A DNA stretch of 64,000 nt from Obrimoposthia wandeli (taxonomy: Eukaryota). Shown here in pieces: positions 14,775 through 63,183 of this stretch. The number at the start of each line of letters is the position of its first letter. The first letter of the stretch is position 1. The notes below the pieces were generated by a model. The model was not told the DNA's origin and ran no database searches. It saw nothing but the letters and a program-made list of their open reading frames with translations. The position numbers and the translations under genes were made by a program. The stretch covers positions 186,001-250,000 of the forward strand of contig CDROCS010003917.1 of assembly GCA_977020255.1 (NCBI GenBank), written 5' to 3'.

Positions 14775-15473
14775 TTATTCGTCGACAAAAAGCTTTGGCT
14801 GTTGTTGATGTATTTCTTCAACCAGTGAAACCACTTTGCCAACATGTATTTTCATAGCCTTCGCGGCAGCGTCACCATCGCTATTGCGGATAGCTTCTAG
14901 GATGGCCTTGTGTTCTTGGTGGGTATCTTCAGGGCGACCTGGAGAGGGTAGTAACAGCTTGCGCACTCTTGCCAATTGCGCATATGCACCCTCAATCACC
15001 CGCTTTAAACGGCCGTAACCGGTAAACTCGCAAAGCAACTGATGAAACTCTTCATCAAGTTGGTAAAAACTCACTAAATCTTGATCTTCGATGCATACTC
15101 TTTGAAACCGTAAATTCTTGGTTAGAGCATCAAGCATTTTGTCAGTGTGATGCTCAGCGACTTGCCTAGCGATAGCGACTTCTAAAGCTTGGCGGATGAA
15201 GGCACTTTCTTTCACATCTTCGATGCGAATTTTGGATACATAAGTACCTCGTTGTGGAAATACTTCCACTAATCTGTCTTCTGTGAGCTTGGCTATCGCT
15301 TCACTAACAGGGGTACGCGACACTCCTAAAGCCTTGCCGACTTCTTCTTTATTGATGGCAACACCCGGTACAAGTTGTTGATCTACAATTGCTTGTAGCA
15401 AAATGTCATACACTTGCATCGCCAGTGGGCGGCTGCGATCAAAGCTCACATCATGTAAAAAACTATAAGGCAT
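14775..15473 (-). CDS. GntR/FCD family regulator
   Basis: wHTH 'LGVSRTPVSEAI' plus FCD 'DEEFHQLL', 'EHKAILEAI'. Confidence 0.93.
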   Translation of the reverse strand: MPYSFLHDVSFDRSRPLAMQVYDILLQAIVDQQLVPGVAINKEEVGKALGVSRTPVSEAIAKLTEDRLVEVFPQRGTYVSKIRIEDVKESAFIRQALEVAIARQVAEHHTDKMLDALTKNLRFQRVCIEDQDLVSFYQLDEEFHQLLCEFTGYGRLKRVIEGAYAQLARVRKLLLPSPGRPEDTHQEHKAILEAIRNSDGDAAAKAMKIHVGKVVSLVEEIHQQQPKLFVDE

Positions 15474-50225: not shown

Positions 50226-50407
50226 GTACTCGGGTTCCTTTAGGTTGTGATGTTTCAGAAAAGTACTGGTTGGTTTTCAATGAAGGTATATTGCTTACCT
50301 ACAACTTAGCTTTTATCCCGTGTTACTTCAAGTAGTGGTACTTCTAGGGTTATCAGGTAGTTGCTGGATTAACAGGTTGAAAGATTAAGAGTGTTTTACT
50401 GATTTTT

Positions 50408-50900
50408 CTTTTGAAGTTGAAGATCAAAGAGTTTTAAAGGCTTCGACTTTGTTGATTTACTTTCTTATGGCGACCAAAGCTTTCGTGTCCTGCTCCCCCC
50501 TTTACCGAAATCCATTTAGGAAAAAAATGAAACTAAGCAAAGTCGCTCTTTATTATCCGTAGCACCGCTTAATACTGTACATTCTGAAAAAAAGGTCGCC
50601 CATCATTGTCTCCGCTGCTCTTTCATACCCATGCGATCGCTGCATTTGTAATCCATTCACATCAATCCTTATGCCTTGGCCAAAATTATTGGTTGCTCGT
50701 CAGCACTATCTCGGCAAGTGCTCCATGCTTTACTTCAACTTCAACTTCAACTCCAACTCCTGCATCTGAGCAGTCTCTGGTGCACACGCACATGCTCAGC
50801 TTCTATAGTTTCAGCCAAAGCAGCGGCGACGATAAAAAGGGTTGCGCGGCTTCGTAGTTAACTCCTGTTAATCGGTTAGTTTTATAAAAAGCATTAATAA
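50408..50900 (-). repeat. Modular intergenic repeat, copy A (inverted)
   Basis: Reverse complement aligns with 58390-58816, 60884-61362 and 53841-54329; internal (ACTTCA)n expansion at 50732-50760. Confidence 0.85.
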
Positions 50901-51035
50901 CAGAAAACCATTTCGATATCTACCAAGGCACTCTTCTTCAGTTGCTCTTAGCTTGGACAGGGTTCGATAGTTGGTGTTAGTTATTCAAATATTTAAGTGA
51001 TACTATAGTGATACTTTTATAGTTGAGGAGTGGTT

Positions 51036-51293
51036 ATGAGAACTGAAGTCGTTACGACATTAAAGAGGCAAGCCACTAAGTTACTGGCAGATTTACATGA
51101 AACGAAAGAACCCATTCTGATAACTGAACATGGACAACCGTCAGCCTATCTGCTTGATGTAGATGATTATGAGTTGATGGTTGATCGTATGAAGATCCTT
51201 GAGGGTATTGCGAAAGGTGAACAAGCTATTCGTGATGGCCGGATAATGCAAACACAGCAAGCAAAAGAGAAAATGAGTAAATGGCTGAAATAA
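51036..51293 (+). CDS. Phd/YefM family antitoxin
   Basis: 'VTTLKRQATKLL', 'PILITEHGQPSAYL'. Confidence 0.92.
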   Translation: MRTEVVTTLKRQATKLLADLHETKEPILITEHGQPSAYLLDVDDYELMVDRMKILEGIAKGEQAIRDGRIMQTQQAKEKMSKWLK

Positions 51294-51601
51294 TTTGGAC
51301 AGAGCCAGCGCTAAACGATTTAGATGATATAGCAGAGTACATTGCTGTTAGTCACCTAGGTGCAGCGAAGCAGTTAGTCGCAAAAGTATTCAGCAAAGTC
51401 CAGAGGTTAGAGTATTTTCCTCTTTCAGGTAAGATTCCTAAAGAAATTCCTACTTTAAATTACCGAGAGTTAGTGGTTAATCCATGTAGGATATTTTACA
51501 AGATTAATGTTGATATGGTTTATATTTTGCATGTTTTAAGGCTAGAAAGGGACTTGCGGAAATTTTTGATATCTGTGGATGAGAAAAGCAAATCATCGTG
51601 A
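51281..51601 (+). CDS. RelE/ParE family toxin
   Basis: 'IIWTEPALNDLDDIAEYIA', 'YRELVVNPCRIFY'; overlaps the antitoxin stop. Confidence 0.92.
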   Translation: MAEIIWTEPALNDLDDIAEYIAVSHLGAAKQLVAKVFSKVQRLEYFPLSGKIPKEIPTLNYRELVVNPCRIFYKINVDMVYILHVLRLERDLRKFLISVDEKSKSS

Positions 51602-51779
51602 TAGTTTGTTTTTTGCTCTCGTAACATTTAAAAGATGAGAAGAGTTTTACTGGTTTTTTTGAAGTTTTAAGGACAAAGGAATTTAAGGGTTTTCGGCTTC
51701 GTCAAATGGTAGTCCTTCTCAAAAATGTTGTAAATTTCAACCTGTGGGCTGGCAGCGGTTCTGAAATTAAACGAAAATC

Positions 51780-52236
51780 CATAACAGACGGTATCTTGAT
51801 GAGAGATTTGAAATGGAGAGGGCAAACTAGAAATGGATCATCACTTTCCGTAATCATGATTGATATTGATTATTTTAAGAAGTATAAGGATACCTAAAGA
51901 CATCAAGCGGGCGATGATTGACTCTGACTCTGCCAAGTAGCAAGTGCATTGCAGCGAGCACTAATAAGTCCATCTGATATATTGGCAAGATATGGCGGTG
52001 AAGAATTGTGCGGGATTGTAAATGGGGGTATGGAAGGTGTAATGAACATTGCTGATTTTTTGCGTAAATCTATTGAGAGTTTGAATATAGAGCATAGCCA
52101 ACCTGACAATGGTATAGTTTCAATTAGTATAGGAGTTAATTCCACAACCTTTTTGAAAGGAGATAGTCCTGCTTTATTTATAGAACAGGCAGATCAAGCT
52201 TTGTATCAGAAAAAAGAATGGACGAGACCAAGTTAG
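51780..52236 (+). pseudogene. Disrupted diguanylate cyclase (GGDEF) fragment
   Basis: 'LSVIMIDIDYFKKY' stop 'HQAGDD' stop/frameshift 'ARYGGEEL..SISIG..ADQALY'; reads on + strand. Confidence 0.85.
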
Positions 52237-52431
52237 CTCATTATAAATTTTCATATTTGCCTATTAAGTTGGGGTGTTATTTTTGTCTATGAAACCGCAT
52301 TTTTTAGTTATTTAAATCTATAAAAACTATAAAAAAAACTATAAAGGACACCCAGAAAATTTGATAAGGCAAATAACTAATGAGTGATGATGATAGATTT
52401 GTTGAATGCTGCAAACATGGAAAACAACAAG

Positions 52432-52625
52432 GTAAGCGGTTAACCAACAACAAACTATTCAGTTCAAAGCTAATCTCATTAAACTAACTTCTTTATCTAA
52501 GGGGTAGTGCATGAGTTGTAGATCATCATCAGATTGGAAAGAATTGGTTGAGCAGCAATGTAACAGTGGGTTTACTGCATCTGTGTTTTACTGTGAAAAT
52601 CACTTCGATCCAAAATACTTCCGAC
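52432..52625 (+). mobile_element. IS66-family left-end remnant (TIR plus TnpA N-terminus)
   Basis: Begins GTAAGCG; 'W.ELVEQQ..SG.TA..F...H..PKYF' matches the IS66 TnpA pattern. Confidence 0.6.
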
Positions 52626-52648
52626 AAACATCACAGTGGGTTTTAATT

Positions 52649-53365
52649 TTGAAAATACTTTTTTTTATACTCATTGCGCTTTCTTCAGCAATATTGAATT
52701 CTGCTGAAAAATTAGTATTCACGGCCCCCGTAGGCTCTTTACTACATACAATCTCTATAAAAGTACTGACCGAGGCCTATAGAGAAATTGGATACGAAGT
52801 TGAAGTTTTGCGTCAGCCTAGTCAACGTGGACTTATAACATCAAACAGTGGCGTAGCTGATGGTGAGGTATCAAGAGTCAAAAGTATTAATAAAGTGTAC
52901 ACCAACCTAATTCGTGTTCCCGTTGTTATTAATCTCCTTGAAGGATTCGCTTTTTCTAAAAGAGCAGATGTTGTTGTATCTGACTGGAACAGTTTAAAAA
53001 AATATGATGTAATCTGCGTCAGAGGAATCAAGTTTTATGAGAAATTGCTGACAGATCGTAATATTGATTGCCAACAAGTCTCTATCTTTGCGCAAGCGGT
53101 TCGAATGATACAAGTTGACCGTGGAGATGTTGTAATTGGCTCGAAAATTAGCGGCCTAAACTACATAAGAAAACTAAATGCGAGCGACGTAAAGATCTCT
53201 GAAAATCCACTGATAACAATAGAACTGTATCATTACTTGCATAAGAAAAATGAAAGCCTCTTGACTGATATTCAAACCGTTTTAGAGGCAATGGTTAAAA
53301 GTGGACGAGTTGCAGAAATTAGAGATGAATACATCAAAGAAATCAATTACGGCCTTGTAGATTAA
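52649..53365 (+). CDS. Solute-binding family 3 periplasmic protein
   Basis: 'R.L..SNSG..DGE.SR', 'YHYLHKKN'; likely true start TTG 52649, the longer ORF includes IS66 sequence. Confidence 0.8.
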   Translation: MKILFFILIALSSAILNSAEKLVFTAPVGSLLHTISIKVLTEAYREIGYEVEVLRQPSQRGLITSNSGVADGEVSRVKSINKVYTNLIRVPVVINLLEGFAFSKRADVVVSDWNSLKKYDVICVRGIKFYEKLLTDRNIDCQQVSIFAQAVRMIQVDRGDVVIGSKISGLNYIRKLNASDVKISENPLITIELYHYLHKKNESLLTDIQTVLEAMVKSGRVAEIRDEYIKEINYGLVD

Positions 53366-53388
53366 ACCACAGTCCAATTACTCCGCCA

Positions 53389-53460
53389 TTAACTCATGCC
53401 TTTAGCGTAGAGACAAAGTATTTGCTTATCCATTTCAGTGAAACGAATTTGGCCCTTTTG
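53389..53460 (-). mobile_element. IS256-family transposase fragment
   Basis: 'QKGQIRFTEMDKQILCLYAKGMS*' matches the conserved IS256 segment. Confidence 0.7.
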
Positions 53461-53812
53461 TAACCGCGGATTATGTGTTATCAAAATGACCGTTTTATCC
53501 TCCATCACTGCCTGCTCGGTAATTGGGTCTAACTCCTCCGTCGGTTTATTCAAAATTAAGCTAGGCGAATTCTTAAATAACGCTTGGATGATATGAATCC
53601 ATCGTTCTTGATCACTCGATAACCCCTTGCAAGTATAGCCTTACTAGGTATTAATCCCTGATGGTAAATAGGCGATAAAATCACAAGATGCGGTGCTGCA
53701 AGCTTGCACTAACTTATCAGTTAGCCTTTGGGCTTGCTCAGTATAGGTGCCATTTAATGGTGGCTGCAAATAGGTAGTAGGTTTGCGATACAAGCGGTAT
53801 TTGTGCGCGCAA
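53461..53812 (-). pseudogene. Degenerate copy of the cydC 3' region
   Basis: Colinear with 61465-61839, with frameshifts and a 21-bp deletion. Confidence 0.9.
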
Positions 53813-53840
53813 AAAAAAGATGAAAGATATGGGACACTTT

Positions 53841-54329
53841 TAACATCTAAGCCCTTAGGGTTTTATAGCTGAAATACACACAGAAGCACTATCATACGTT
53901 AATCAAACTAAGAAGGCGCCAATACTTTTGTATTGCGCCGGAGTAATTTGATAAATTGACGAAGTGTAGTGACAGGATGCTACAAAGAGTGAATTCGCCA
54001 TAAATGGTGCTCATGAGCGGCCGGCAATTTAGAAAATTATGGAAGAGTTTTTCGGCAATAGCAGGGTGAGTTTTTATGTACAGGATGTATGTTATTAAGC
54101 GGTGCCATGATTGGCAAGGAGCGGCTTTGCTTACTTTCATTTTGACTACATAGATGTAGGTAAGGAGCGTGAGCAAGACGCGGAAACTTTGGCCGCAAAA
54201 GAAAGTCAGTCGACGAAGACGAAAGCCTTTAAAAACAGGTTTGAATTTAAACCTCAAAGCTCTTTGACACCCATGCCATCGCTACATATTGTACTTCCTG
54301 TACATAAAAAATAAATCAGTTAAATCTTC
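53841..54329 (+). repeat. Modular intergenic repeat, copy B
   Basis: Left module aligns with 60884-61030, right module with 61240-61362, tail 54299-54329 with 58786-58816. Confidence 0.85.
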
Positions 54330-54355
54330 TATTTTTACATATCGGTAAATTAAAC

Positions 54356-54722
54356 ATGCATTCTGCCACCCATTACATAATCCTAACAATCTTCGGTGTC
54401 ACCACCGCAAATCTACTATCAAATGGGATAACTGCTTACGCCGTTGAGCTACAACTGGCAGAACAAAGCAAAAAACTAATCGCTAGCTTCCAGCAAGCAA
54501 GTCAAAAACAACAAAGATACAACACTGCTTCAGAAAATAGCTGAAGATAACTGGAGAAAATCAAAAAATAAACGCACAAGCTCAACAACCGGTGCTCGAC
54601 TTTGGCGAAACTGTAAAGACTGGGAAAAAGTTAACGTACAAACGCCCAGCTACACCACCAATCAAGGCAAGCTGAAACATTGTAGCGTTTATAAAACTTA
54701 TATCGATAAAGGCCAACGCCTT
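54356..54722 (+). pseudogene. Frameshifted small secreted/membrane protein
   Basis: Hydrophobic N-terminus in the 62-aa ORF; continues in another frame as 'WRNCKDWEK..SYTT..KHC..Y..YI.KG'. Confidence 0.4.
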
Positions 54723-55551
54723 AGTTGTGAATATATTCTGTTGCTGTTTTATCAAACAGCTGTAGTTTTCTACAAACCCACAATGTAACTAAATAGGCAA
54801 TACAGCCGACAAGGATGCCTTGTAAACTACCTAGTGTGATATCTATCGGTGTGTGTACGCGTAAAATGAGCCTTGAGTAACATACCAGTGCAGCCCAAGG
54901 TAATAATAGATAAAAGAAATACTGCTTTTCCCTCTCTAAAAAGGTTATGGCCAAAAGAATGAGAAAACTGCTAAAAAAGAGCGTAGTAAAGGCATGCCCT
55001 GATGGCATAGAATAACCCGCTTCCTGTTGCCAATGAGCAGTAATTTTGGGTGTAAGTTCGTAGTTTTTATCCAATTGATTCAGCGCTATAGTCAGTACAG
55101 CGCGCCGTGCTTCTTTATCTCCTGTTTTATAAAATTGCTCAGGGCTCATGCCTAAAGGTCCTGAACTATCTTGCTCCGCTAGCCATACAATATTTGGACG
55201 AGGTACCTGCAAAGCCTCTTTTATTACATGCTCATTAAACATTGAACCGCTGCCAGCAAATGCACCGCCAATTACAGCGAATATGATAAAACTTTTAAAG
55301 TTTAACGCTTTCGCATAATTCGTTTGTAAGCTAAATATAATTAAGCATAGCAAAGCTATGGCTGGTGCACCGTATTTGCCACCGGATTCTGATAGCCAAT
55401 AAAAAAAATTATAGACGTTTTGGGGAAATGTTAGAAAAGGCGGCTGCGACGCATCTATCGTTTGTGATAAAAATGAGGCACTAATAAATAGCCATAACAC
55501 TAGTAAAGGGATGATAGCACGCGTTAATAAATAGGAAAATTTTATCGGCAT
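54721..55551 (-). CDS. PAP2 family phosphatase (PgpB-like)
   Basis: 'K.AL.VPRP', 'YSMPSGHA', 'SRLILRVH.P.D'; likely start ATG 55551. Confidence 0.88.
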   Translation of the reverse strand: MPIKFSYLLTRAIIPLLVLWLFISASFLSQTIDASQPPFLTFPQNVYNFFYWLSESGGKYGAPAIALLCLIIFSLQTNYAKALNFKSFIIFAVIGGAFAGSGSMFNEHVIKEALQVPRPNIVWLAEQDSSGPLGMSPEQFYKTGDKEARRAVLTIALNQLDKNYELTPKITAHWQQEAGYSMPSGHAFTTLFFSSFLILLAITFLEREKQYFFYLLLPWAALVCYSRLILRVHTPIDITLGSLQGILVGCIAYLVTLWVCRKLQLFDKTATEYIHN

Positions 55552-55801
55552 TGGTTGATTTTTATCTCTTGAATAATATCGGCACTTGCATAGCAATTGA
55601 TAAGTATAACGCTTAATCGTAAAAATAGGTCTGCCCAAAGCGCATCAATGTATTCTTAGGCAGGAATATAGAATTTATGCGAACGAATAAATAAAATAGT
55701 CTATGGAATAGACGCTTTTAAGGTTTCACCGTTAATTACAAACTCTTCTATTTTCAAGTTCAAAAAGGGTACTAATGCTTTATGGACGACCCATACATGC
55801 T

Positions 55802-56257
55802 TCATATTAAACGCCTTAGCCGTGTGCCAGTGCTTTTAAAACCTTTACTCTCATAGAATTTAATAGTTCTAGGGCTTTCGTTTGGAGGAGGGCTGCCTAC
55901 TTCTAACCGCTTCCAACCTAGTTCATTTGCTTTTTCAACAGCGGCGTTTAACAGCAGATCACCAATGTTAGATGAGCGATGTGTTGGTTTAACATACAGC
56001 TCAGATATTTCACCGAACACACCCCCGGCGTATATTGCTGCACATTCATGAAGCGTAATAATGCCAATGTTTTCATTATTATGTTTTGCTATGAACGCCC
56101 ATATTTTAGATGAATCTATTAAATCTTTGGCTACACGCTCTAACTCTGTATTTTCAATATTGTCTTTAGCGCAAGGGCTAAGTTCAGTCAATAGGGCTTT
56201 CACTAATTCAGCTATATCTTTATAGTTAACGCTTTGTGTAATCACGACATTATTCAT
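55802..56257 (-). CDS. GNAT acetyltransferase
   Basis: 'ISELYVKP.HRS..IG..LL', 'KFYESKGF'. Confidence 0.9.
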   Translation of the reverse strand: MNNVVITQSVNYKDIAELVKALLTELSPCAKDNIENTELERVAKDLIDSSKIWAFIAKHNNENIGIITLHECAAIYAGGVFGEISELYVKPTHRSSNIGDLLLNAAVEKANELGWKRLEVGSPPPNESPRTIKFYESKGFKSTGTRLRRLI

Positions 56258-56489
56258 ATTAACTCTCTTATTAAATAGTTATCTTACAAGACTAAACTAC
56301 TGACCAGTAAGATTTTTTTCTCGTATTAAAATTTATTTAGGCCTTTACTAACACTAACAATAGATTGCCTGTGTAAATAAAAGCTATGGGACATATATGG
56401 ACACCCCATCATAGTCAATTTAAATTGTCGTGTTTATCGTACCGTCGCACAATTTTAAGTACTCTATTTCGTTTCGCAGGCTTATCGAT

Positions 56490-56557
56490 AATCAATAGGG
56501 TCAGAGTAACTTGATAATCAATTTACTCTGACCCTATTGATTTGACCCCATTGATTT
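56490..56557. repeat. REP-like 20-bp perfect palindrome plus partial third arm
   Basis: aatcaatagggtcagagtaa (56490-56509) / ttactctgaccctattgatt (56523-56542); tgaccccattgatt follows. Confidence 0.85.
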
Positions 56558-57012
56558 CTTAGACACAGATTTTACCCGCAATTTTAATCTAAATTCATTA
56601 TGCAAATAATTTATCGGCTCAGCCTCTCCCTGCTGCCCGGTTGAGTTTGGTTCTTGGTGTAGCCAGCTATTAGCAATCTAAAAAAAATCTAATTTACTCG
56701 CACCTTTCTGCCTTTAATTATAATTTTAGTCAAATTAGTTGCATTTTCACTGAAAAAAGCTCTAAAACCTATAACTAGTTACAGGTGTATAAGTATTTGT
56801 TTTGTAATAAAATACACCTCGACTTTAGAGGGCTTTTCTATATTATTTTGACTTAAAAGCAAGAAGAAAGGCCTGGCCCTTTTATCCTATAAGTTAATGT
56901 TTGAAAGATCAGCAGGCTTAAAATTAGTTGATACTGCGTCCGGTAATTGAGCATAAATAAAACTATCATTTGCTATGAATATATTCATTTTTATATAAAG
57001 AGATTCAAATAA

Positions 57013-58236
57013 ATGCTAGAGATATCACAGAGCAAAGCGCCATCTCAACTGTTTGCTCGACAGCCTATTTTCGATATTGATCTGGAACTGGTGGGCTATG
57101 AACTTTTATTTCGCCCTATAGAAGAATTAAGCCGAATGGATGGTGAGTTAGCTACCTCTAAAGTACTACTTAATTGCTTTGCTGAGACTACCCTTGCTGT
57201 TGCTGTTGAAAATACCTGTGCGTTTATCAATTTTAACGATCATTGGCTGTTGGAGACCCCACCCTTTGGTCCTGAAAATATTGTTATTGAGGTATTAGAA
57301 GGGGTGCAGGTGAACGTCGAGTTTTTAGATAAAATAAAAAATCTACATGCTGAAGGCTATCAAATAGCGCTCGATGATTTCGTGTTAAATTTAGAAACAG
57401 CACAGTTACTACCCTATGCCTCAATCGTAAAAATTGACATTTTAGCGCAAGAGTCCATTGCGGAACTGACTCTCTTAGTCAAAAAATTAAGGAAGCATAC
57501 TTTTAAATTATTAGCCGAAAAGGTAGAAGATTACGAGACATTTCGCGTTTGCCAGCAATTGGAATTCGATTTGTATCAGGGTTATTATTTCTGCAAACCG
57601 GAAATCATTGAAGGTCATGTTGTTCATCCCCATCGCATTGCAACACTTGAGTTATTAGGTAAGTTAAATGAGCCGAATATAAGTATTACTGCGATAGAGG
57701 ATTGCTTAAAAAGTAATCCTGTCTTAGTGGTTAAGTTACTTAAGCTAGTTAATAGTGTGCAGTTCATTCAAAGTAACTCAGTTGATTGTCTAAGAAAAGC
57801 CATTATCATATTAGGCTTAGATAACTTGAAACGTTGGGTTTTATTAATTGTATTGGTTTCAATGGACGATAAGCCTAATTCACTGCTTAGACATGCCTTA
57901 GTACGTGCACGAACCATGGAGAATATTGCTCTGAAAATACCCAACAAAAACCCTCATGCGTATTTTTTAACGGGCATATTATCCTATATGGATACTTTTT
58001 TTGATAAGTCCCTTGAAGAAGTGATTAACATTTTACCTATAGCTAATTGGATGAAAGAGGCTATTCTTTTACGTACAGGTGAGGTAGGTAATCTTTTGTT
58101 GTTAATGGATTTTATTGATATTGGTAAGTGGCAAGAGTTGGCTACAAACACACTGCCGGTATCCGAAGATGAATTTAATTCTGCCTTCGTTGAGAGTATT
58201 GAGTGGGTAGACAATGTGATGGTTAATCTGAAATAA
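57013..58236 (+). CDS. EAL-HDOD protein (YuxH/CdgJ-like)
   Basis: 'FARQPIFD..GYELLFR', 'ALDDF', 'AEKVE', 'QGYYF', then HDOD 'LLKLVNS..AI..LG'. Confidence 0.92.
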   Translation: MLEISQSKAPSQLFARQPIFDIDLELVGYELLFRPIEELSRMDGELATSKVLLNCFAETTLAVAVENTCAFINFNDHWLLETPPFGPENIVIEVLEGVQVNVEFLDKIKNLHAEGYQIALDDFVLNLETAQLLPYASIVKIDILAQESIAELTLLVKKLRKHTFKLLAEKVEDYETFRVCQQLEFDLYQGYYFCKPEIIEGHVVHPHRIATLELLGKLNEPNISITAIEDCLKSNPVLVVKLLKLVNSVQFIQSNSVDCLRKAIIILGLDNLKRWVLLIVLVSMDDKPNSLLRHALVRARTMENIALKIPNKNPHAYFLTGILSYMDTFFDKSLEEVINILPIANWMKEAILLRTGEVGNLLLLMDFIDIGKWQELATNTLPVSEDEFNSAFVESIEWVDNVMVNLK

Positions 58237-58389
58237 ATTCAATAGCAAAGCTGTGGTTGAGCCGTAAAGTATATCTAGAGAGAGTGGGGTCTTTTCTGTT
58301 GCCTAAGCAAGAAGCTAAATCTGGCCCCAAGACCTTTATAGGCGTATCAAGGGTAATATGGGAAAAGGTAATATGGGATAACCACTTTT

Positions 58390-58816
58390 AAGAACTAAGT
58401 CATTAAGATTTTATAGTTGTTCCCTATTATTAGATAAATATATAGGCATAAGCACTATCACTCTCTAATCAAGCTACGAAGCTGCCTAGACCCCTTGTAT
58501 TGCCGCCGCAGCTTTGGGTGAAATTATTGAAGCGTTGCAACAGGCAGACTTTTAGCTCCCGGCAAAGTCTAAGTATCTATATCCCTATAGGCAATGTTGC
58601 GTAGAGCGACTGCGACTGAATGGATGCAGGAGGTAGAATAAAGCATCGAGAACTTATCGAGATGGCGTTTACTAGCGGCGCAATAATTTTGCGCAAGCGC
58701 AGGAACTTGATGTAAAAGGATTTACAAATGCAGCGATCACATGGATGTGAATGAGCTGTAGAGGCAATAGTGGGCGATCTTTGTATGTACATAAAAAATA
58801 AATCAGTTAAATTCTT
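58390..58816 (+). repeat. Modular intergenic repeat, copy C
   Basis: 58390-58700 aligns closely with 60884-61200. Confidence 0.9.
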
Positions 58817-59321
58817 CCTAATCTTTATATTTTATTAAGCCCTCTAAGCTAAAGCCTCCAACCCCTTTCTCTGCGACAAGATTAAGCAAATTCAATAATC
58901 AATTTGGCAACTCCCCGTGTAATCATAGAAAAGACAGTCATTAGAATGAAAGGAGCATTTAGCGATTGTTAAACACTATATAAAATCGTCGATGAATTAA
59001 CTTATTCTGATAAGAGCCAGGAATCTTTCAGATAACGTTTTTAGAGAGGCTGTCGGGGTGTTATTTCTCTGTGAGATAAAGCGTTATAAGTGTTGTTATA
59101 GTCACTTTATATACGATTATTGAAAACCTATTTTTTATAACTAATCGAATAATGGCGCCCTTGTCGTTACAAGGGTGTAGTGACTTTGTCGTATATCCTG
59201 CCTAGTGACTTGATGGTTATGTTCTCGTTAGCAAACGCTATATTGATAATGCTATCTGTATAGAAATGTTTGTTTATCAGCGCATTATCCATGGCGTATG
59301 CACTTTTGCATCACCCTGATG

Positions 59322-60568
59322 CTACGTTTCAATAACACGAGCGTGTGCGGCTTTATTATCTAAAGTTAGTTTTATAACACTTTGCTCTGCCGGTACTCCC
59401 AACCTGAAAGGAAATCCATAGTGACCGGTACCTCGATGCACATATAACTTTATTTTACCCAAACCCCATAATCCATGATCGGGCGTCTTTGAAAATAAAC
59501 TGAGTATCGTAGTTTTAAAACCTAAGCTCCAACCAGCGATTTTGGCCCCGCCATGCGTATGGCCATAATATTAGTCAATCTGGTTACTAGGTAGTGACAA
59601 AATATGAGCAGGATCATGTAGCATGGCAATACTTACTGATGACATTGCCACTATATTAGTAAAGCCTTTCATTGCTTGATTTAGTTTCGATACTTTGTCT
59701 TTAAAATGATGCAGAAACCAATTACTTGAACAGCACCAAGTCGTGTTTGCACTATTTGAGACTCATCTATTAGCAAAGTAATATCGTTGTTAGTTAAAGC
59801 TTCCTTTACAATTTCAGGCGCCTCGTAGTCATGATTCCCCCTACACGCAAATACCTTGCCTTTAAAAACTTTTAATGGCTTTAGTGCTAGCGTCAGTATT
59901 TTTGCACTCTCTTTTGATTCCATAGTTAACAAATCACCCGTCACTAAAATAAAGATCAGGGGTTTTGTGCCACAAATACTGCAGATCACGCTTAAGCCGT
60001 TCTAATAGACATATAGGGTCCCAAATGAGGGTCAGTTAATTGCACGATATACGAATTTAGCATCGAGTGTCATTGGCACTGGGTTTAGCTAAGTTTAATC
60101 GACTCAATTTTAAGGGCTCAGCGTTATCACTGAGATCTATATATACGCTCTCTTGGGTGCAGTAAAAATTTTGTATTAAACCAATTCCCCCCAAAATATA
60201 GGGAATATATAGCAAATTAATATTGTCAAACGGTGGTGACCACCATAGTGCCCAGGGGAAACGCTAGGATGGTGCCCCAAACCACTAGCCCGGCCAATTA
60301 GCAAAACTCGCATTATCACAGGGCGCATTTTAGGCCTAACAAGTAGTAGGGAGTCAGCAAATACTAAACCATGTAACAGCACTATAATGGGAAGGGGGAT
60401 GAAGTTTATTAAAGTGTCAAATACAGCGATAAAAATCAAGCTATAAACTGTTAAGATAATGCCCCGAAAAATAGCAAAGGATTTAGAGCGAAAGAACCAA
60501 CTAATAACGAAGTTAAACAATAATAAAAAAAATGTTGCTACGCTCATATTATCCAAAATAATATCCAA
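59322..60568 (-). pseudogene. Fragmented membrane metallophosphoesterase (YkuE/YaeI-like)
   Basis: TM N-terminus, 'IVQLTDPHLGP', 'VTGD', 'GNHD', 'GHTHGG', 'YVHRGTGHYGFPFRLGVPAE' spread over several frames. Confidence 0.88.
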
Positions 60569-60883
60569 AATGCGTTCATCCTATGCGTAATTATAAAATA
60601 ATCATTTATAAAAAGAGTACCCCTTGTGAATTATTATCATAATTATAAAAGAGCAAAACTATAGAATTTTCAAGCGCGACCTATTCGCTATCAATTAGCG
60701 TCGTTTTCTAAGAGGCAAAAATTACTTTAAGCAAGCTGTTGATACCATTCAGCTTCACTGATCAAACCTAGCGTCGATTCTAATTGATCGATAAAGGTTA
60801 ACCCGTTTAAATTGTCTAGTTCATGCTTGAAAATACGGGCTAATGGGGTCAAGTCTAGTTTCTTGTATTCATGGTGAATAAAT

Positions 60884-61362
60884 AAGAACTAAGTCATTAA
60901 GGTTTTATAACTTCTTCTCTTTTATTAGATAAATAGATAGGCAGGCAGAAGCACTATCACACTCGAATCAAGCTACGAAACTGCCTAAACCCCTTGTATT
61001 GCCGCCGGAGCTTTGGGTGAAATTATTGAAGCTTAGCAACAGGCAGACTTTTAGCTCCCGGCAAAGTCACAAGTACCTATCCCTATAAATAATGTTGCGT
61101 AAGTGAGTACATTTCATGGATCACAGGAGGTAGAATAAAGCATGGAGCACTTATCGAGATGGCGCTGATGAGCGGCCAATAATTTTGCACAAAGCGCAGG
61201 AGTTGTCGGCAATGGTAGGGTGGCCTTTGCTTTGGTTCTGTTTCTTTTGCCTACAGGACGTAGGTAAGGAGCGATAGCAGGACGAGGTAGCTTTGGCTAC
61301 TCAAAAGAAATGAACTCGACGAAGTCGAAAGCCCTTAACATCTCTTGAATTTAAACCTCAAA
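60884..61362 (+). repeat. Modular intergenic repeat, copy D
   Basis: Left and middle modules as in copy C, right module as in copies B and A. Confidence 0.9.
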
Positions 61363-61431
61363 AAAGAAAGCAGCTAAATCTATTAATCTATCAGAAAAAA
61401 ACCACCAAGTTAGCCTACAAAAACACCTACA

Positions 61432-63183
61432 TCACAATGAATACACCCTATCAACACTCTTCAATAACCGCGGATTATGTGTAATCAAAATAACCGTTTT
61501 ATCCGCCATCAGCTGCCAAATAGCCGCCATCACTGCCTGCTCGGTTATTGGATCTAACCCCTCAGTCGGTTCATCTAAAATCAGGATAGGTGAGTTCTTA
61601 AGTATAGCTTGGGCGATATGAATACGCCGTGCTTGACCGCCTGATAAGCCCTTGCCCGTTTCGCCTAACCAAGTATCAATACCTTGCGGTAAATCGGCGA
61701 TAAAATCACAAGCTGCGATGCTGCAAGCTTGTGCCAACTCATCATCAGTTGCTTTTGGGTTGGCCAGTAATAGGTTGTCTTTAATGGTGGCTGCAAATAG
61801 GTAACAGCTTTGCGATACCAGCGATATTTGTGCACGCAATGCATCACCTGAACAATCATTTATATCAACATTATCAATACCTCCATGCAAGCCGCCAATA
61901 CCAATCATGTCTCTATCGCAAGGGTAAAATCCTTGTAGCAGCTGTACAATGCTGGATTTTCCACTACCGCTTTTGCCGGTTAATGCTATTTTTTCACCTT
62001 GTTTAACATGCATTGAAAAGTTATTGATGACATTGCGGTGATCAGTATTTGGATAACTAAAGCAAAGCTGCTTAATGCTGATGTTGAGTTGCTGTTTTGA
62101 GCTAAGAAAGTCGATAGATTGTGGCTTAAGGGGCTCTGCTCTTACCGGTGTTTGATCAGCAAGTTGGAATAAACGCTTGGCGGCGGCCAATGTGCTAGAC
62201 AGTTGTTCAAACGCTAAAGGTAGCGGTAATACAGTTTCAAAAGCAGCGATGACTAATAACAGCAGCATGATTAACTCGCCGTTTTTGATCTCACTATTAA
62301 TTACTGCATTTGATAGCAGTAACAAGCTACACCAAATGCAAATGTTGATGATGGTTAGTGAGATGCTTTGTGCATTGGCGTTGACGTTATTTAGCTGTGT
62401 TTGCGTATCACTTAATTGCTCGCTACAACGTAACACATGGGCTTTTTGGGTGGCACTGGCGCCATAGATTTCAAGCTCGCGCATGCCTTGTAAGCCATCA
62501 ATAATCGCGGTTGATAACTGTTGTTGCTCAGTGCTTACCAGTGCGCCACTTTTTTGGCTTCTTTTGGCTACCCAAAGAGGTAACAGTACGCCGCTGCTGA
62601 TCAGCGCGATGATTAAGATCAGCGCTAGCGGTGGGTAAAAATAGTTAGCCACAGCATAGACGATAGGCACAGTGATAAGCGCAACAATAACTGGTAAAGC
62701 AATGCGTAAATAAAAATTATCGAGCTGTTCAATATCTGCTTGTAGCCTTGAGAGTAGATCGCTGCTGCGATATTGATGCAGGCCAGCGGGAGCGAGTGGT
62801 TCTAGCTTTTGGTAAAACCAGTGACGCAAATATGCCAACATTAAAAAGGTAGCGTTGTGGGTGACTAAACGTTCGCCATAGCGCCCCGCGGTTCTAACGA
62901 TGGCTAAAAAACGGATCACACCAGAGGGGGTGAAGTAATTGATGCTTACCCCTGCGATACCGGCAGCGGCCATGGCAGCAATGAACCAGCCAGATACACT
63001 TAATAGCGCAATATTGGCAAGTACTGTAGTAGCCGATAACAAAATACCCACACTTAGCCACTGCCAGTGGGGGCGAGCGAAGGCTAATAAGCGCAGTATT
63101 GTGCGCCAATTGCTCTCTTCAGCTTTAGCGCTGCTGGTGGTTTTTTTTGATAATACCGGAGAGGGTGTTGCTGTTTTATTCAT
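61432..63183 (-). CDS. cydC: Thiol reductant ABC exporter subunit CydC
   Basis: 'ALLSVSGWFI', 'RTAGRYGERLVTHNATF', GKSGSGKS, LSGGQARR, DEPTEGLD. Confidence 0.93.
   Translation of the reverse strand: MNKTATPSPVLSKKTTSSAKAEESNWRTILRLLAFARPHWQWLSVGILLSATTVLANIALLSVSGWFIAAMAAAGIAGVSINYFTPSGVIRFLAIVRTAGRYGERLVTHNATFLMLAYLRHWFYQKLEPLAPAGLHQYRSSDLLSRLQADIEQLDNFYLRIALPVIVALITVPIVYAVANYFYPPLALILIIALISSGVLLPLWVAKRSQKSGALVSTEQQQLSTAIIDGLQGMRELEIYGASATQKAHVLRCSEQLSDTQTQLNNVNANAQSISLTIINICIWCSLLLLSNAVINSEIKNGELIMLLLLVIAAFETVLPLPLAFEQLSSTLAAAKRLFQLADQTPVRAEPLKPQSIDFLSSKQQLNISIKQLCFSYPNTDHRNVINNFSMHVKQGEKIALTGKSGSGKSSIVQLLQGFYPCDRDMIGIGGLHGGIDNVDINDCSGDALRAQISLVSQSCYLFAATIKDNLLLANPKATDDELAQACSIAACDFIADLPQGIDTWLGETGKGLSGGQARRIHIAQAILKNSPILILDEPTEGLDPITEQAVMAAIWQLMADKTVILITHNPRLLKSVDRVYSL

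What the first reader, a model, noticed from the sequence alone, without database searches (positions are those of the whole stretch)
50408..61362. Four diverged copies of a modular ~430-490 bp non-coding element within 11 kb
Copies: A 50408-50900 (-), B 53841-54329, C 58390-58816, D 60884-61362. They share ordered modules: left (TAAGTCATTAAG.TTTTATA ... GCACTATCA ... CTACGAAGCTGCC..CCCCTTGTATTGCCGCC..AGCTTTGGGTGAAATTATTGAAGC), middle (GGATGCAGGAGGTAGAATAAAGCATGGAGCACTTATCGAGATGGCG..ATGAGCGGCCAATAATTTTG) and right (GTAGGTAAGGAGCG..CAAAAGAAA..TCGACGAAG.CGAAAGCC..TTGAATTTAAACCTCAAA). Each copy carries a different subset: C lacks the right module, A has a hexamer expansion, and B and C share a 30-bp tail. 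I see no TIR, no TSD and no conserved ORF. All copies sit in the pseudogene-rich zone. Inference: a non-autonomous mosaic mobile or RNA element of unknown mechanism that may promote local rearrangement.
Basis: partly seen in the sequence, partly recalled or inferred. Interest (0 to 1): 0.7.

Follow-up and report, generated by a model that had tools for sequence, protein, structure and literature searches.

The report
Decaying copies of TwoAYGGAY small RNA
The four repeats are real, but they are copies, each damaged to some degree, of an already catalogued multi-copy bacterial small RNA (TwoAYGGAY, Rfam RF01731) thought to soak up the regulator protein CsrA, so this is a new host clade for a known RNA, not a new kind of element.

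Summary
Four diverged, modular copies lie at about 50394-50920 (-), 53827-54325, 58371-58812 and 60883-61379. They are not a local duplication: the same assembly holds at least 23 more on over ten contigs. They are genes for a structured RNA. A covariance model of the 5' domain aligns 77 copies with 93.7% of cells paired and compensatory changes at 35 of 49 pairs. G-U pairs outnumber A-C mismatches 262 to 46, which fixes the strand. The 3' domain is a covarying pseudoknot. Two hairpin loops and one junction carry GGA, and every extra "module" is another GGA-loop hairpin plugged in at fixed points. Compact sibling copies and distant relatives reach the Rfam TwoAYGGAY model (RF01731); the four window copies do not, because of inserts and decay. 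A 2026 preprint already describes this extended, multi-copy architecture in Pseudomonadota and proposes a multivalent Csr/Rsm sponge that spreads like a mobile element. New here are the Oceanospirillaceae clade, head-to-tail runs of up to nine units in one strain, a positioned upstream motif, a candidate triple helix in the pseudoknot, and erosion of the window copies. An earlier report of this scan (s1-250282) found TwoAYGGAY-like repeats on other DNA of this assembly. Function is inferred, not shown.

The parts
60883..61379 (+). Copy D, the most complete. Upstream block 60883-60909; RNA core starts near 60973; 5' domain 60985-61220 (outer stem 60990-61006 with 61207-61220; long inner stem 61010-61028 with 61177-61195; first hairpin 61036-61098 with a ~50-nt loop insert; second hairpin region 61103-61175 with an insert and its 5' strand substituted); pseudoknot 61220-61311 with two extra GGA hairpins (61250-61264 and about 61270-61290); small hairpin 61316-61328; A-rich tail to 61379.
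   Evidence: Model R1 scores 99.4 bits at 60985-61220. Sequence read. Orthologous copy at the same position in the sister strain, C1143:337259-337634.
58371..58812 (+). Copy C, a 3'-truncated variant. Upstream motif 58371-58383; core starts near 58474; 5' domain 58486-58720, with the 5' strand of the second hairpin lost in a 6-nt deletion; two extra GGA hairpins at 58712-58725 and 58738-58749; outer-stem 3' strand 58763-58774; pseudoknot deleted; tail 58786-58812.
   Evidence: R1 scores 56.3 bits. Aligned with its two close relatives, C1143:267413-267842 and C688:9695-10081. Sequence read.
53827..54325 (+). Copy B. The helices of the 5' domain are kept, but the loops are eroded. Upstream motif 53827-53837; 5' domain 53919-54066; first hairpin 53966-53983 keeps GGA; second hairpin 53997-54009 has lost it; pseudoknot region 54064-54206 holds four inserted hairpins, three of which have lost GGA, and the first pseudoknot stem no longer pairs; small hairpin 54210-54222; inverted piece of the A/C module 54259-54295; tail 54299-54325.
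   Evidence: R1 scores 99.0 bits. Loop letters and from the sequence. Inverted pair I4 and direct family D11.
50394..50920 (-). Copy A, heavily decayed. Core starts near 50857 reading downward; only a partial 5' domain remains at 50665-50826; the first hairpin is lost; a hexamer expansion sits in the insert of the second hairpin (about 50735-50760); the first pseudoknot stem is still recognisable (50600-50594 with 50475-50469); tail near 50410-50394.
   Evidence: With filters off, R1 gives only 19.2 bits, over model positions 21-131. Sequence read.

Best explanation
The four elements are genes, or gene remnants, of the TwoAYGGAY small-RNA family in its extended Pseudomonadota form. The host is an Oceanospirillaceae bacterium whose contigs sit in a large mixed assembly. 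The transcript folds into a long two-part basal stem that holds a three-way junction with two hairpins. The terminal loops of those hairpins present GGA (the AYGGAY type), and a third GGA lies in the junction after the stem. A 3' H-type pseudoknot and a small hairpin follow. Extra GGA-loop hairpins are plugged in at a few tolerated points: the two loops, the junction, and two points of the pseudoknot. That gives 3 to about 8 sites per RNA and explains the mosaic of modules. The most likely function is a multivalent decoy for the single CsrA protein of the cell, with the stem and pseudoknot acting as a stable scaffold. Shown here: homology, structure, strand, loop conservation, copy number and distribution. 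Inferred: transcription, CsrA binding and the scaffold role. In this window the copies are eroding: A is nearly dead, B has lost most GGA loops, C has lost the pseudoknot, and D has one damaged stem.
For: Dispersal: 42 DNA matches and 23 model hits across the assembly. Structure: 16 of 49 pairs are compensatory among 5 copies. Across 77 copies, 93.7% of cells are paired against 35-45% in the slid controls, and 35 of 49 pairs change on both sides. Strand: 262 G-U pairs against 46 A-C mismatches. Loops: the first loop is AGGAU or AGGAC in 56 of 77 copies, and the second is UGGA or GGGA in 62 of 77. GGA outnumbers its complement 5-11 to 1-3 in each window copy. Pseudoknot: 5 of 6 pairs of the first stem covary. 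Family: RF01731 hits of 51.2 and 46.0 bits on sibling copies against a gathering score of 43, and 45-55 bits on distant relatives at the same places and on the same strand as my model's hits. Literature: CsrA-site proposal (PMC4333381); extended architecture, high copy number, extra AYGGAY hairpins and the sponge hypothesis (bioRxiv 10.64898/2026.09.22.753630). Each of the five genomes searched has at least one csrA gene (four have one, one has two), and none has a CsrB, RsmZ or RsmY match above threshold.
Against: No Rho-independent terminator ends the RNA in this clade, and no GacA/UvrY-type palindromic box was seen by eye upstream. Both are usual for Csr/Rsm decoys. In strain AS21 the first loop reads ACGAU in 12 units. 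Twenty or more copies for one CsrA is far beyond any proven sponge set. The four window copies themselves do not reach the Rfam model. The minimum-free-energy fold of copy D is no more stable than shuffles (z = 0.18).
Confidence: 0.62

Rival explanations
1. A selfish, non-autonomous mobile element. The conserved fold serves its own copying (as RNA or as single-stranded DNA), and the GGA loops are incidental or serve a mobility protein. This does not exclude the sponge reading.
For: At least 20 copies in several genomes of the clade, but typically one weak match in the more distant genomes that have it (three of them have 4-8). Dispersed, tandem and divergent arrangements occur. The same C-type variant, with its upstream block, sits at an unrelated locus. 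The preprint reports copy numbers that vary by tens to hundreds between strains and an excess of divergent doublets.
Against: No terminal inverted repeat or target-site duplication. No recurrent neighbouring protein in the flanks. A true integron integrase occurs in only two of five carriers, and not near the copies. Copy D keeps its position between the same two genes in a sister strain with about 90% protein identity. The GGA loops are conserved across the order.
Confidence: 0.2
2. A cis-acting element for neighbouring genes. Read on the opposite strand, the small hairpin plus a T-run would act as a terminator for genes that converge on the element.
For: The consensus scan finds a terminator-like site on the minus strand at 61329-61315, just downstream of the ABC-transporter gene that ends at 61432. 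In genome G012 four copies each converge on a toxin-antitoxin operon.
Against: The wobble-pair asymmetry puts the selected structure on the sense strand. A 5-bp stem cannot account for about 230 conserved, covarying positions. Many copies are tandem or divergent, with no converging gene.
Confidence: 0.06
3. Remains of a decayed protein-coding gene family, or of one local segmental duplication.
For: Short stretches look translatable, and the zone is rich in pseudogenes.
Against: No frame stays open in any copy. Variation follows base pairing. Copies lie on many contigs and in free-living relatives.
Confidence: 0.02

Closest known systems
TwoAYGGAY RNA motif (Rfam RF01731; Weinberg et al. 2010, PMC2864571)
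   Same: [quoted passage not shown] There is no consistent downstream gene. It occurs in Gammaproteobacteria. Sibling copies score above the family's gathering threshold.
   Different: The Rfam model covers only the core. Here the basal stem is much longer and two-part, a 3' pseudoknot follows, and the loops often carry inserts. As a result the window copies escape the model.
Extended TwoAYGGAY of Pseudomonas (Li et al., bioRxiv 2026, 10.64898/2026.09.22.753630)
   Same: Elongated basal stem, additional hairpins, a 3' pseudoknot, tens of copies per genome, clustered copies, and variants with added AYGGAY hairpins.
   Different: A different clade: Oceanospirillaceae is not named in that text. 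Head-to-tail runs of nine and four units occur in strain AS21, whereas the preprint found only doublets enriched. The upstream feature here is a GGGACA-type motif near -110, not short GMTBT repeats. The triple-helix register and the two pseudoknot insertion points do not appear in the sections I read or in my text search of the main text; the supplement was not read.
CsrB / RsmX-Y-Z decoy RNAs
   Same: Several GGA motifs are shown in hairpin loops and in single-stranded linkers. There is no ORF, and gene families can be multi-copy. Rfam lists RF01731 in clan CL00106; from memory, unverified, that is the Csr/Rsm clan.
   Different: No sequence match to those models. A rigid long-range scaffold and a pseudoknot are present. 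No terminator or GacA box was seen. Copy number is much higher. Binding to CsrA has never been tested for this family, as far as the papers I read say.
Mosaic intergenic repeats (BIME/REP arrays, BOX elements, MITEs)
   Same: Modular make-up, many copies between genes, variable orientation, and association with other repeats.
   Different: Much larger, with a complex covarying tertiary-type fold, strand-specific wobble pairs and what looks like its own upstream control region. No terminal inverted repeats.

Membership tests
TwoAYGGAY RNA (RF01731) | Score at or above the curated gathering threshold (43 bits) | tested here: inconclusive
   Met by sibling copies in the same assembly (51.2 and 46.0 bits) and by distant relatives (45-55 bits). 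Not met by the four window copies, which give no hit at E<=5. These are tied to the siblings by my model R1 (99, 99, 56 and 19 bits) and by DNA identity.
TwoAYGGAY RNA (RF01731) | Two sequential hairpins on a common basal stem | tested here: met
   Consensus fold and pair counts. Both hairpin stems have compensatory changes (helices 5 and 7).
TwoAYGGAY RNA (RF01731) | AYGGAY-type terminal loops on both hairpins | tested here: met
   Across the family, 56 of 77 and 62 of 77 copies have it. In the window it is partly lost: B lacks it in the second hairpin, A lacks the first hairpin, and C and D carry inserts in both loops.
Extended Pseudomonadota TwoAYGGAY | [quoted passage not shown] | tested here: met
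   A 21-pair inner stem plus the outer stem. The first pseudoknot stem covaries at 5 of 6 pairs. The pseudoknot is absent from copy C and broken in B.
Csr/Rsm protein-sequestering sRNA | Several GGA sites, mostly in hairpin loops | tested here: met
   Three core sites plus up to five plug-in hairpins. Strong strand bias of GGA.
Csr/Rsm protein-sequestering sRNA | Binds and titrates CsrA/RsmA | not testable with these tools
   csrA is present in every genome checked, one gene each in the carriers G002, G012 and G028, and on six contigs of this assembly. No binding data exist.
Csr/Rsm protein-sequestering sRNA | GacA/UvrY-type upstream box and an intrinsic terminator | tested here: not met
   By eye, no palindromic box of that type in 73 upstream regions. 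A different positioned motif is present instead. No sense-strand terminator in the scan.
MITE / IS-derived element | Terminal inverted repeats, target-site duplication, or a cognate transposase | tested here: not met
   None. No recurrent flanking protein.
Integron attC site | Simple imperfect hairpin of 57-141 bp next to cassettes, with an integron integrase | tested here: not met
   The fold is a junction plus a pseudoknot of 230 nt or more. An integrase above cut-off occurs in only 2 of 5 carriers, and far from the copies.

The most novel reading that the evidence does not exclude
The 3' pseudoknot is a major-groove triple helix. Its first loop (UUUUCUUU) runs parallel to the purine strand (AAAAGAAA) of the second stem, and the two change together in distant relatives: all-U with all-A, and two C with two G. 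The triplex would cap and stabilise a scaffold into which GGA hairpins are plugged at set points. In some strains up to nine units would be co-transcribed as one giant decoy.
Probability: 0.4. Interest if true: 0.55.

Novelty: new member of a known kind. Interest (0 to 1): 0.3.

Why it matters
It removes a false lead. The mosaic "unknown element" is a catalogued RNA family, and the modules are explained. It extends that family to an animal- or environment-associated Oceanospirillaceae lineage, where curated models miss most copies. It shows that the copies decay in a pseudogene-rich zone. It also supplies concrete structural predictions, namely the triplex register and the fixed insertion points, for a widespread RNA whose function is still unproven.

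Tried and rejected
Direct Rfam scans of the window gave nothing at gathering thresholds or at E<=5 over 50-62 kb. The family surfaced only through my own model and its distant hits.

Coding reading: six-frame translations are all broken.

A recurrent partner protein was sought in the flanks of 18 loci; only syntenic genes of a sister strain turned up.

Integron idea: prompted by toxin-antitoxin cassettes beside copies in G012, and dropped after the integrase search.

Known decoy models CsrB, RsmZ and RsmY gave no valid hits. The weak hits were gene ends with terminators.

Thermodynamics: the fold of copy D is no better than shuffles.

An automatic search for triplex tracts was too crude. I replaced it with a register count on alignment A6.

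I left that step out, so sub-feature coordinates in 'parts' were read by eye and may be off by a base or two.
Full report
**Observation.** A is inverted. C lacks the right-hand block. B and C share an identical 27-nt tail. All six frames are broken in every copy. The repeats are not confined to the locus. A DNA search of the whole assembly with copy D returns 42 matches on more than ten contigs, and copies A and B find more. Mapping the pieces shows about 25 elements of 220-670 bp, each holding a different subset of the blocks. Compact forms are 230-270 bp.

**What kind of thing it is.** The compact copies show helices that change in step. RNAalifold on five of them gives 49 pairs, 16 of them with compensatory changes. 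I built covariance model R1 for this 149-position 5' domain. It finds 23 copies in the assembly. On 77 copies from several genomes, 93.7% of cells are paired against 35-45% when partners are slid, and 35 of 49 pairs change on both sides.

The fold has an outer stem and a long inner stem that enclose a three-way junction with two hairpins. Downstream lies an H-type pseudoknot whose first stem covaries at 5 of 6 pairs, then a 5-bp hairpin and an A-rich tail.

**The modules.** The first hairpin loop is AGGAU or AGGAC in 56 of 77 copies. The second is UGGA or GGGA in 62 of 77. The junction after the inner stem also carries GGA in most copies. Every optional block is one or two further hairpins with GGA in the loop. 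These are inserted in the two loops, in the junction, or at two fixed points of the pseudoknot. This explains the mosaic without any exchange mechanism.

**Identity.** The window itself gives no Rfam hit. The nearest genome is an Oceanospirillaceae MAG, with 95% identity for one enzyme. R1 finds 9 copies in that MAG and 18 in the isolate AS21. In AS21, nine units lie head to tail on one strand and four on the other. They are separated by a resolvase fragment and a 1498-residue ATPase-like gene. Of 151 genomes sampled from that family, 11 carry the RNA, nine of them with six to at least twenty matches. Of 151 sampled from the order, 13 carry it, mostly as a single weak match.

Those distant matches coincide in place and strand with Rfam TwoAYGGAY (RF01731) at 45-55 bits. 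Compact siblings in this assembly reach 51.2 and 46.0 bits against a threshold of 43. The family was defined in 2010 (PMC2864571). Its loops were proposed as CsrA sites in 2015 (PMC4333381). A 2026 preprint describes the extended Pseudomonadota form: a longer basal stem, extra hairpins, a 3' pseudoknot, medians of 11-23 copies among non-aeruginosa Pseudomonas groups, divergent doublets, and variants with added AYGGAY hairpins. It proposes a multivalent Csr/Rsm sponge with mobile-like expansion. An earlier report of this scan reached a TwoAYGGAY-like reading on another piece of this assembly.

**Mechanism.** I favour the decoy reading. Each of the five genomes checked has at least one csrA gene. 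None of the five has a valid match to the CsrB, RsmZ or RsmY models. The loop letters fit the CsrA consensus as I recall it. Against this reading, no terminator or GacA-type box was seen, and nothing here shows transcription or binding.

A different upstream motif (GGGACA type) sits about 106-116 nt before the model start in 17 of 73 distinct upstream regions, against 0.9 expected. This suggests regulated promoters. Some tandem units have no room for a promoter of their own.

**A structural detail that may be new.** The first loop of the pseudoknot runs in parallel register with the purine strand of the second stem. In that register, 146 of 152 cells are U with A or C with G, against 45-70% when slid. 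In distant relatives the loop, the Watson-Crick strand and the purine strand change together. This fits a major-groove triple helix, but most sequences share one variant, so the support is moderate.

**State of the window copies.** A scores 19 bits and has lost the first hairpin. B keeps the helices (99 bits) but has lost GGA in the second loop and in three of four inserted hairpins, and its first pseudoknot stem no longer pairs. C (56 bits) lacks the pseudoknot and the 5' strand of the second hairpin. Two relatives elsewhere share the missing pseudoknot but not the 6-nt deletion. D (99 bits) is complete except for a substituted strand in the second hairpin. It keeps its place between an ABC-transporter gene and a phosphoesterase gene in a sister strain, where the neighbouring gene is intact but is in pieces here.

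**Verdict.** This is a real feature and a member of a known family in a new clade. Function is inferred.

Noticed in passing
window 59325-60580 (-): A calcineurin-like phosphoesterase gene is in at least five pieces here. An intact 399-residue ortholog lies beside the orthologous RNA copy on contig C1143 (L007:1954-3150).
   Followed up: partly
window 53392-53862: A fragment resembling the 3' part of the ABC-transporter gene at 61432-63183 (79-94% DNA identity in blocks) lies directly before copy B. It looks like the remnant of a duplicated gene-plus-RNA unit in rearranged order.
   Followed up: partly
window 56490-56542: A near-perfect 26-nt palindrome (96% complementary, 1 nt between the arms). 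A similar sequence lies in a spacer of the AS21 array (L093, about 15420-15450). It may be a shared REP-like hairpin.
   Followed up: no
window 55652-59352: About 3.7 kb here corresponds to only about 240 bp in the syntenic stretch of contig C1143. It holds an acetyltransferase gene, an EAL-HDOD gene and copy C. This is either an insertion here or a deletion there.
   Followed up: partly
whole assembly G000: The assembly is 1.35 Gb in 6912 contigs and carries csrA on six different contigs. It also holds two Oceanospirillaceae strains about 90% alike in protein sequence. It therefore contains several bacterial genomes besides whatever else it holds.
   Followed up: partly
L093:8969-13937 (genome G002, strain AS21): A resolvase fragment and a 1498-residue gene with weak AAA-ATPase matches lie between the nine-unit and the four-unit RNA runs. 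They look like an island inserted into one former array.
   Followed up: no
L120 (genome G012, 2906500-2915500): Four RNA copies each converge on a toxin-antitoxin operon: three HigB/HigA-like pairs, one AbiE-like pair, and a HipA fragment.
   Followed up: partly
L052/L021 (contig C4142, about 1-110); L093:15700-15800; window about 50735-50760: Short tandem repeats of 6-8 nt abut or sit inside several copies: a heptamer run after one copy, an octamer run in AS21 spacers, and the hexamer run in copy A.
   Followed up: no
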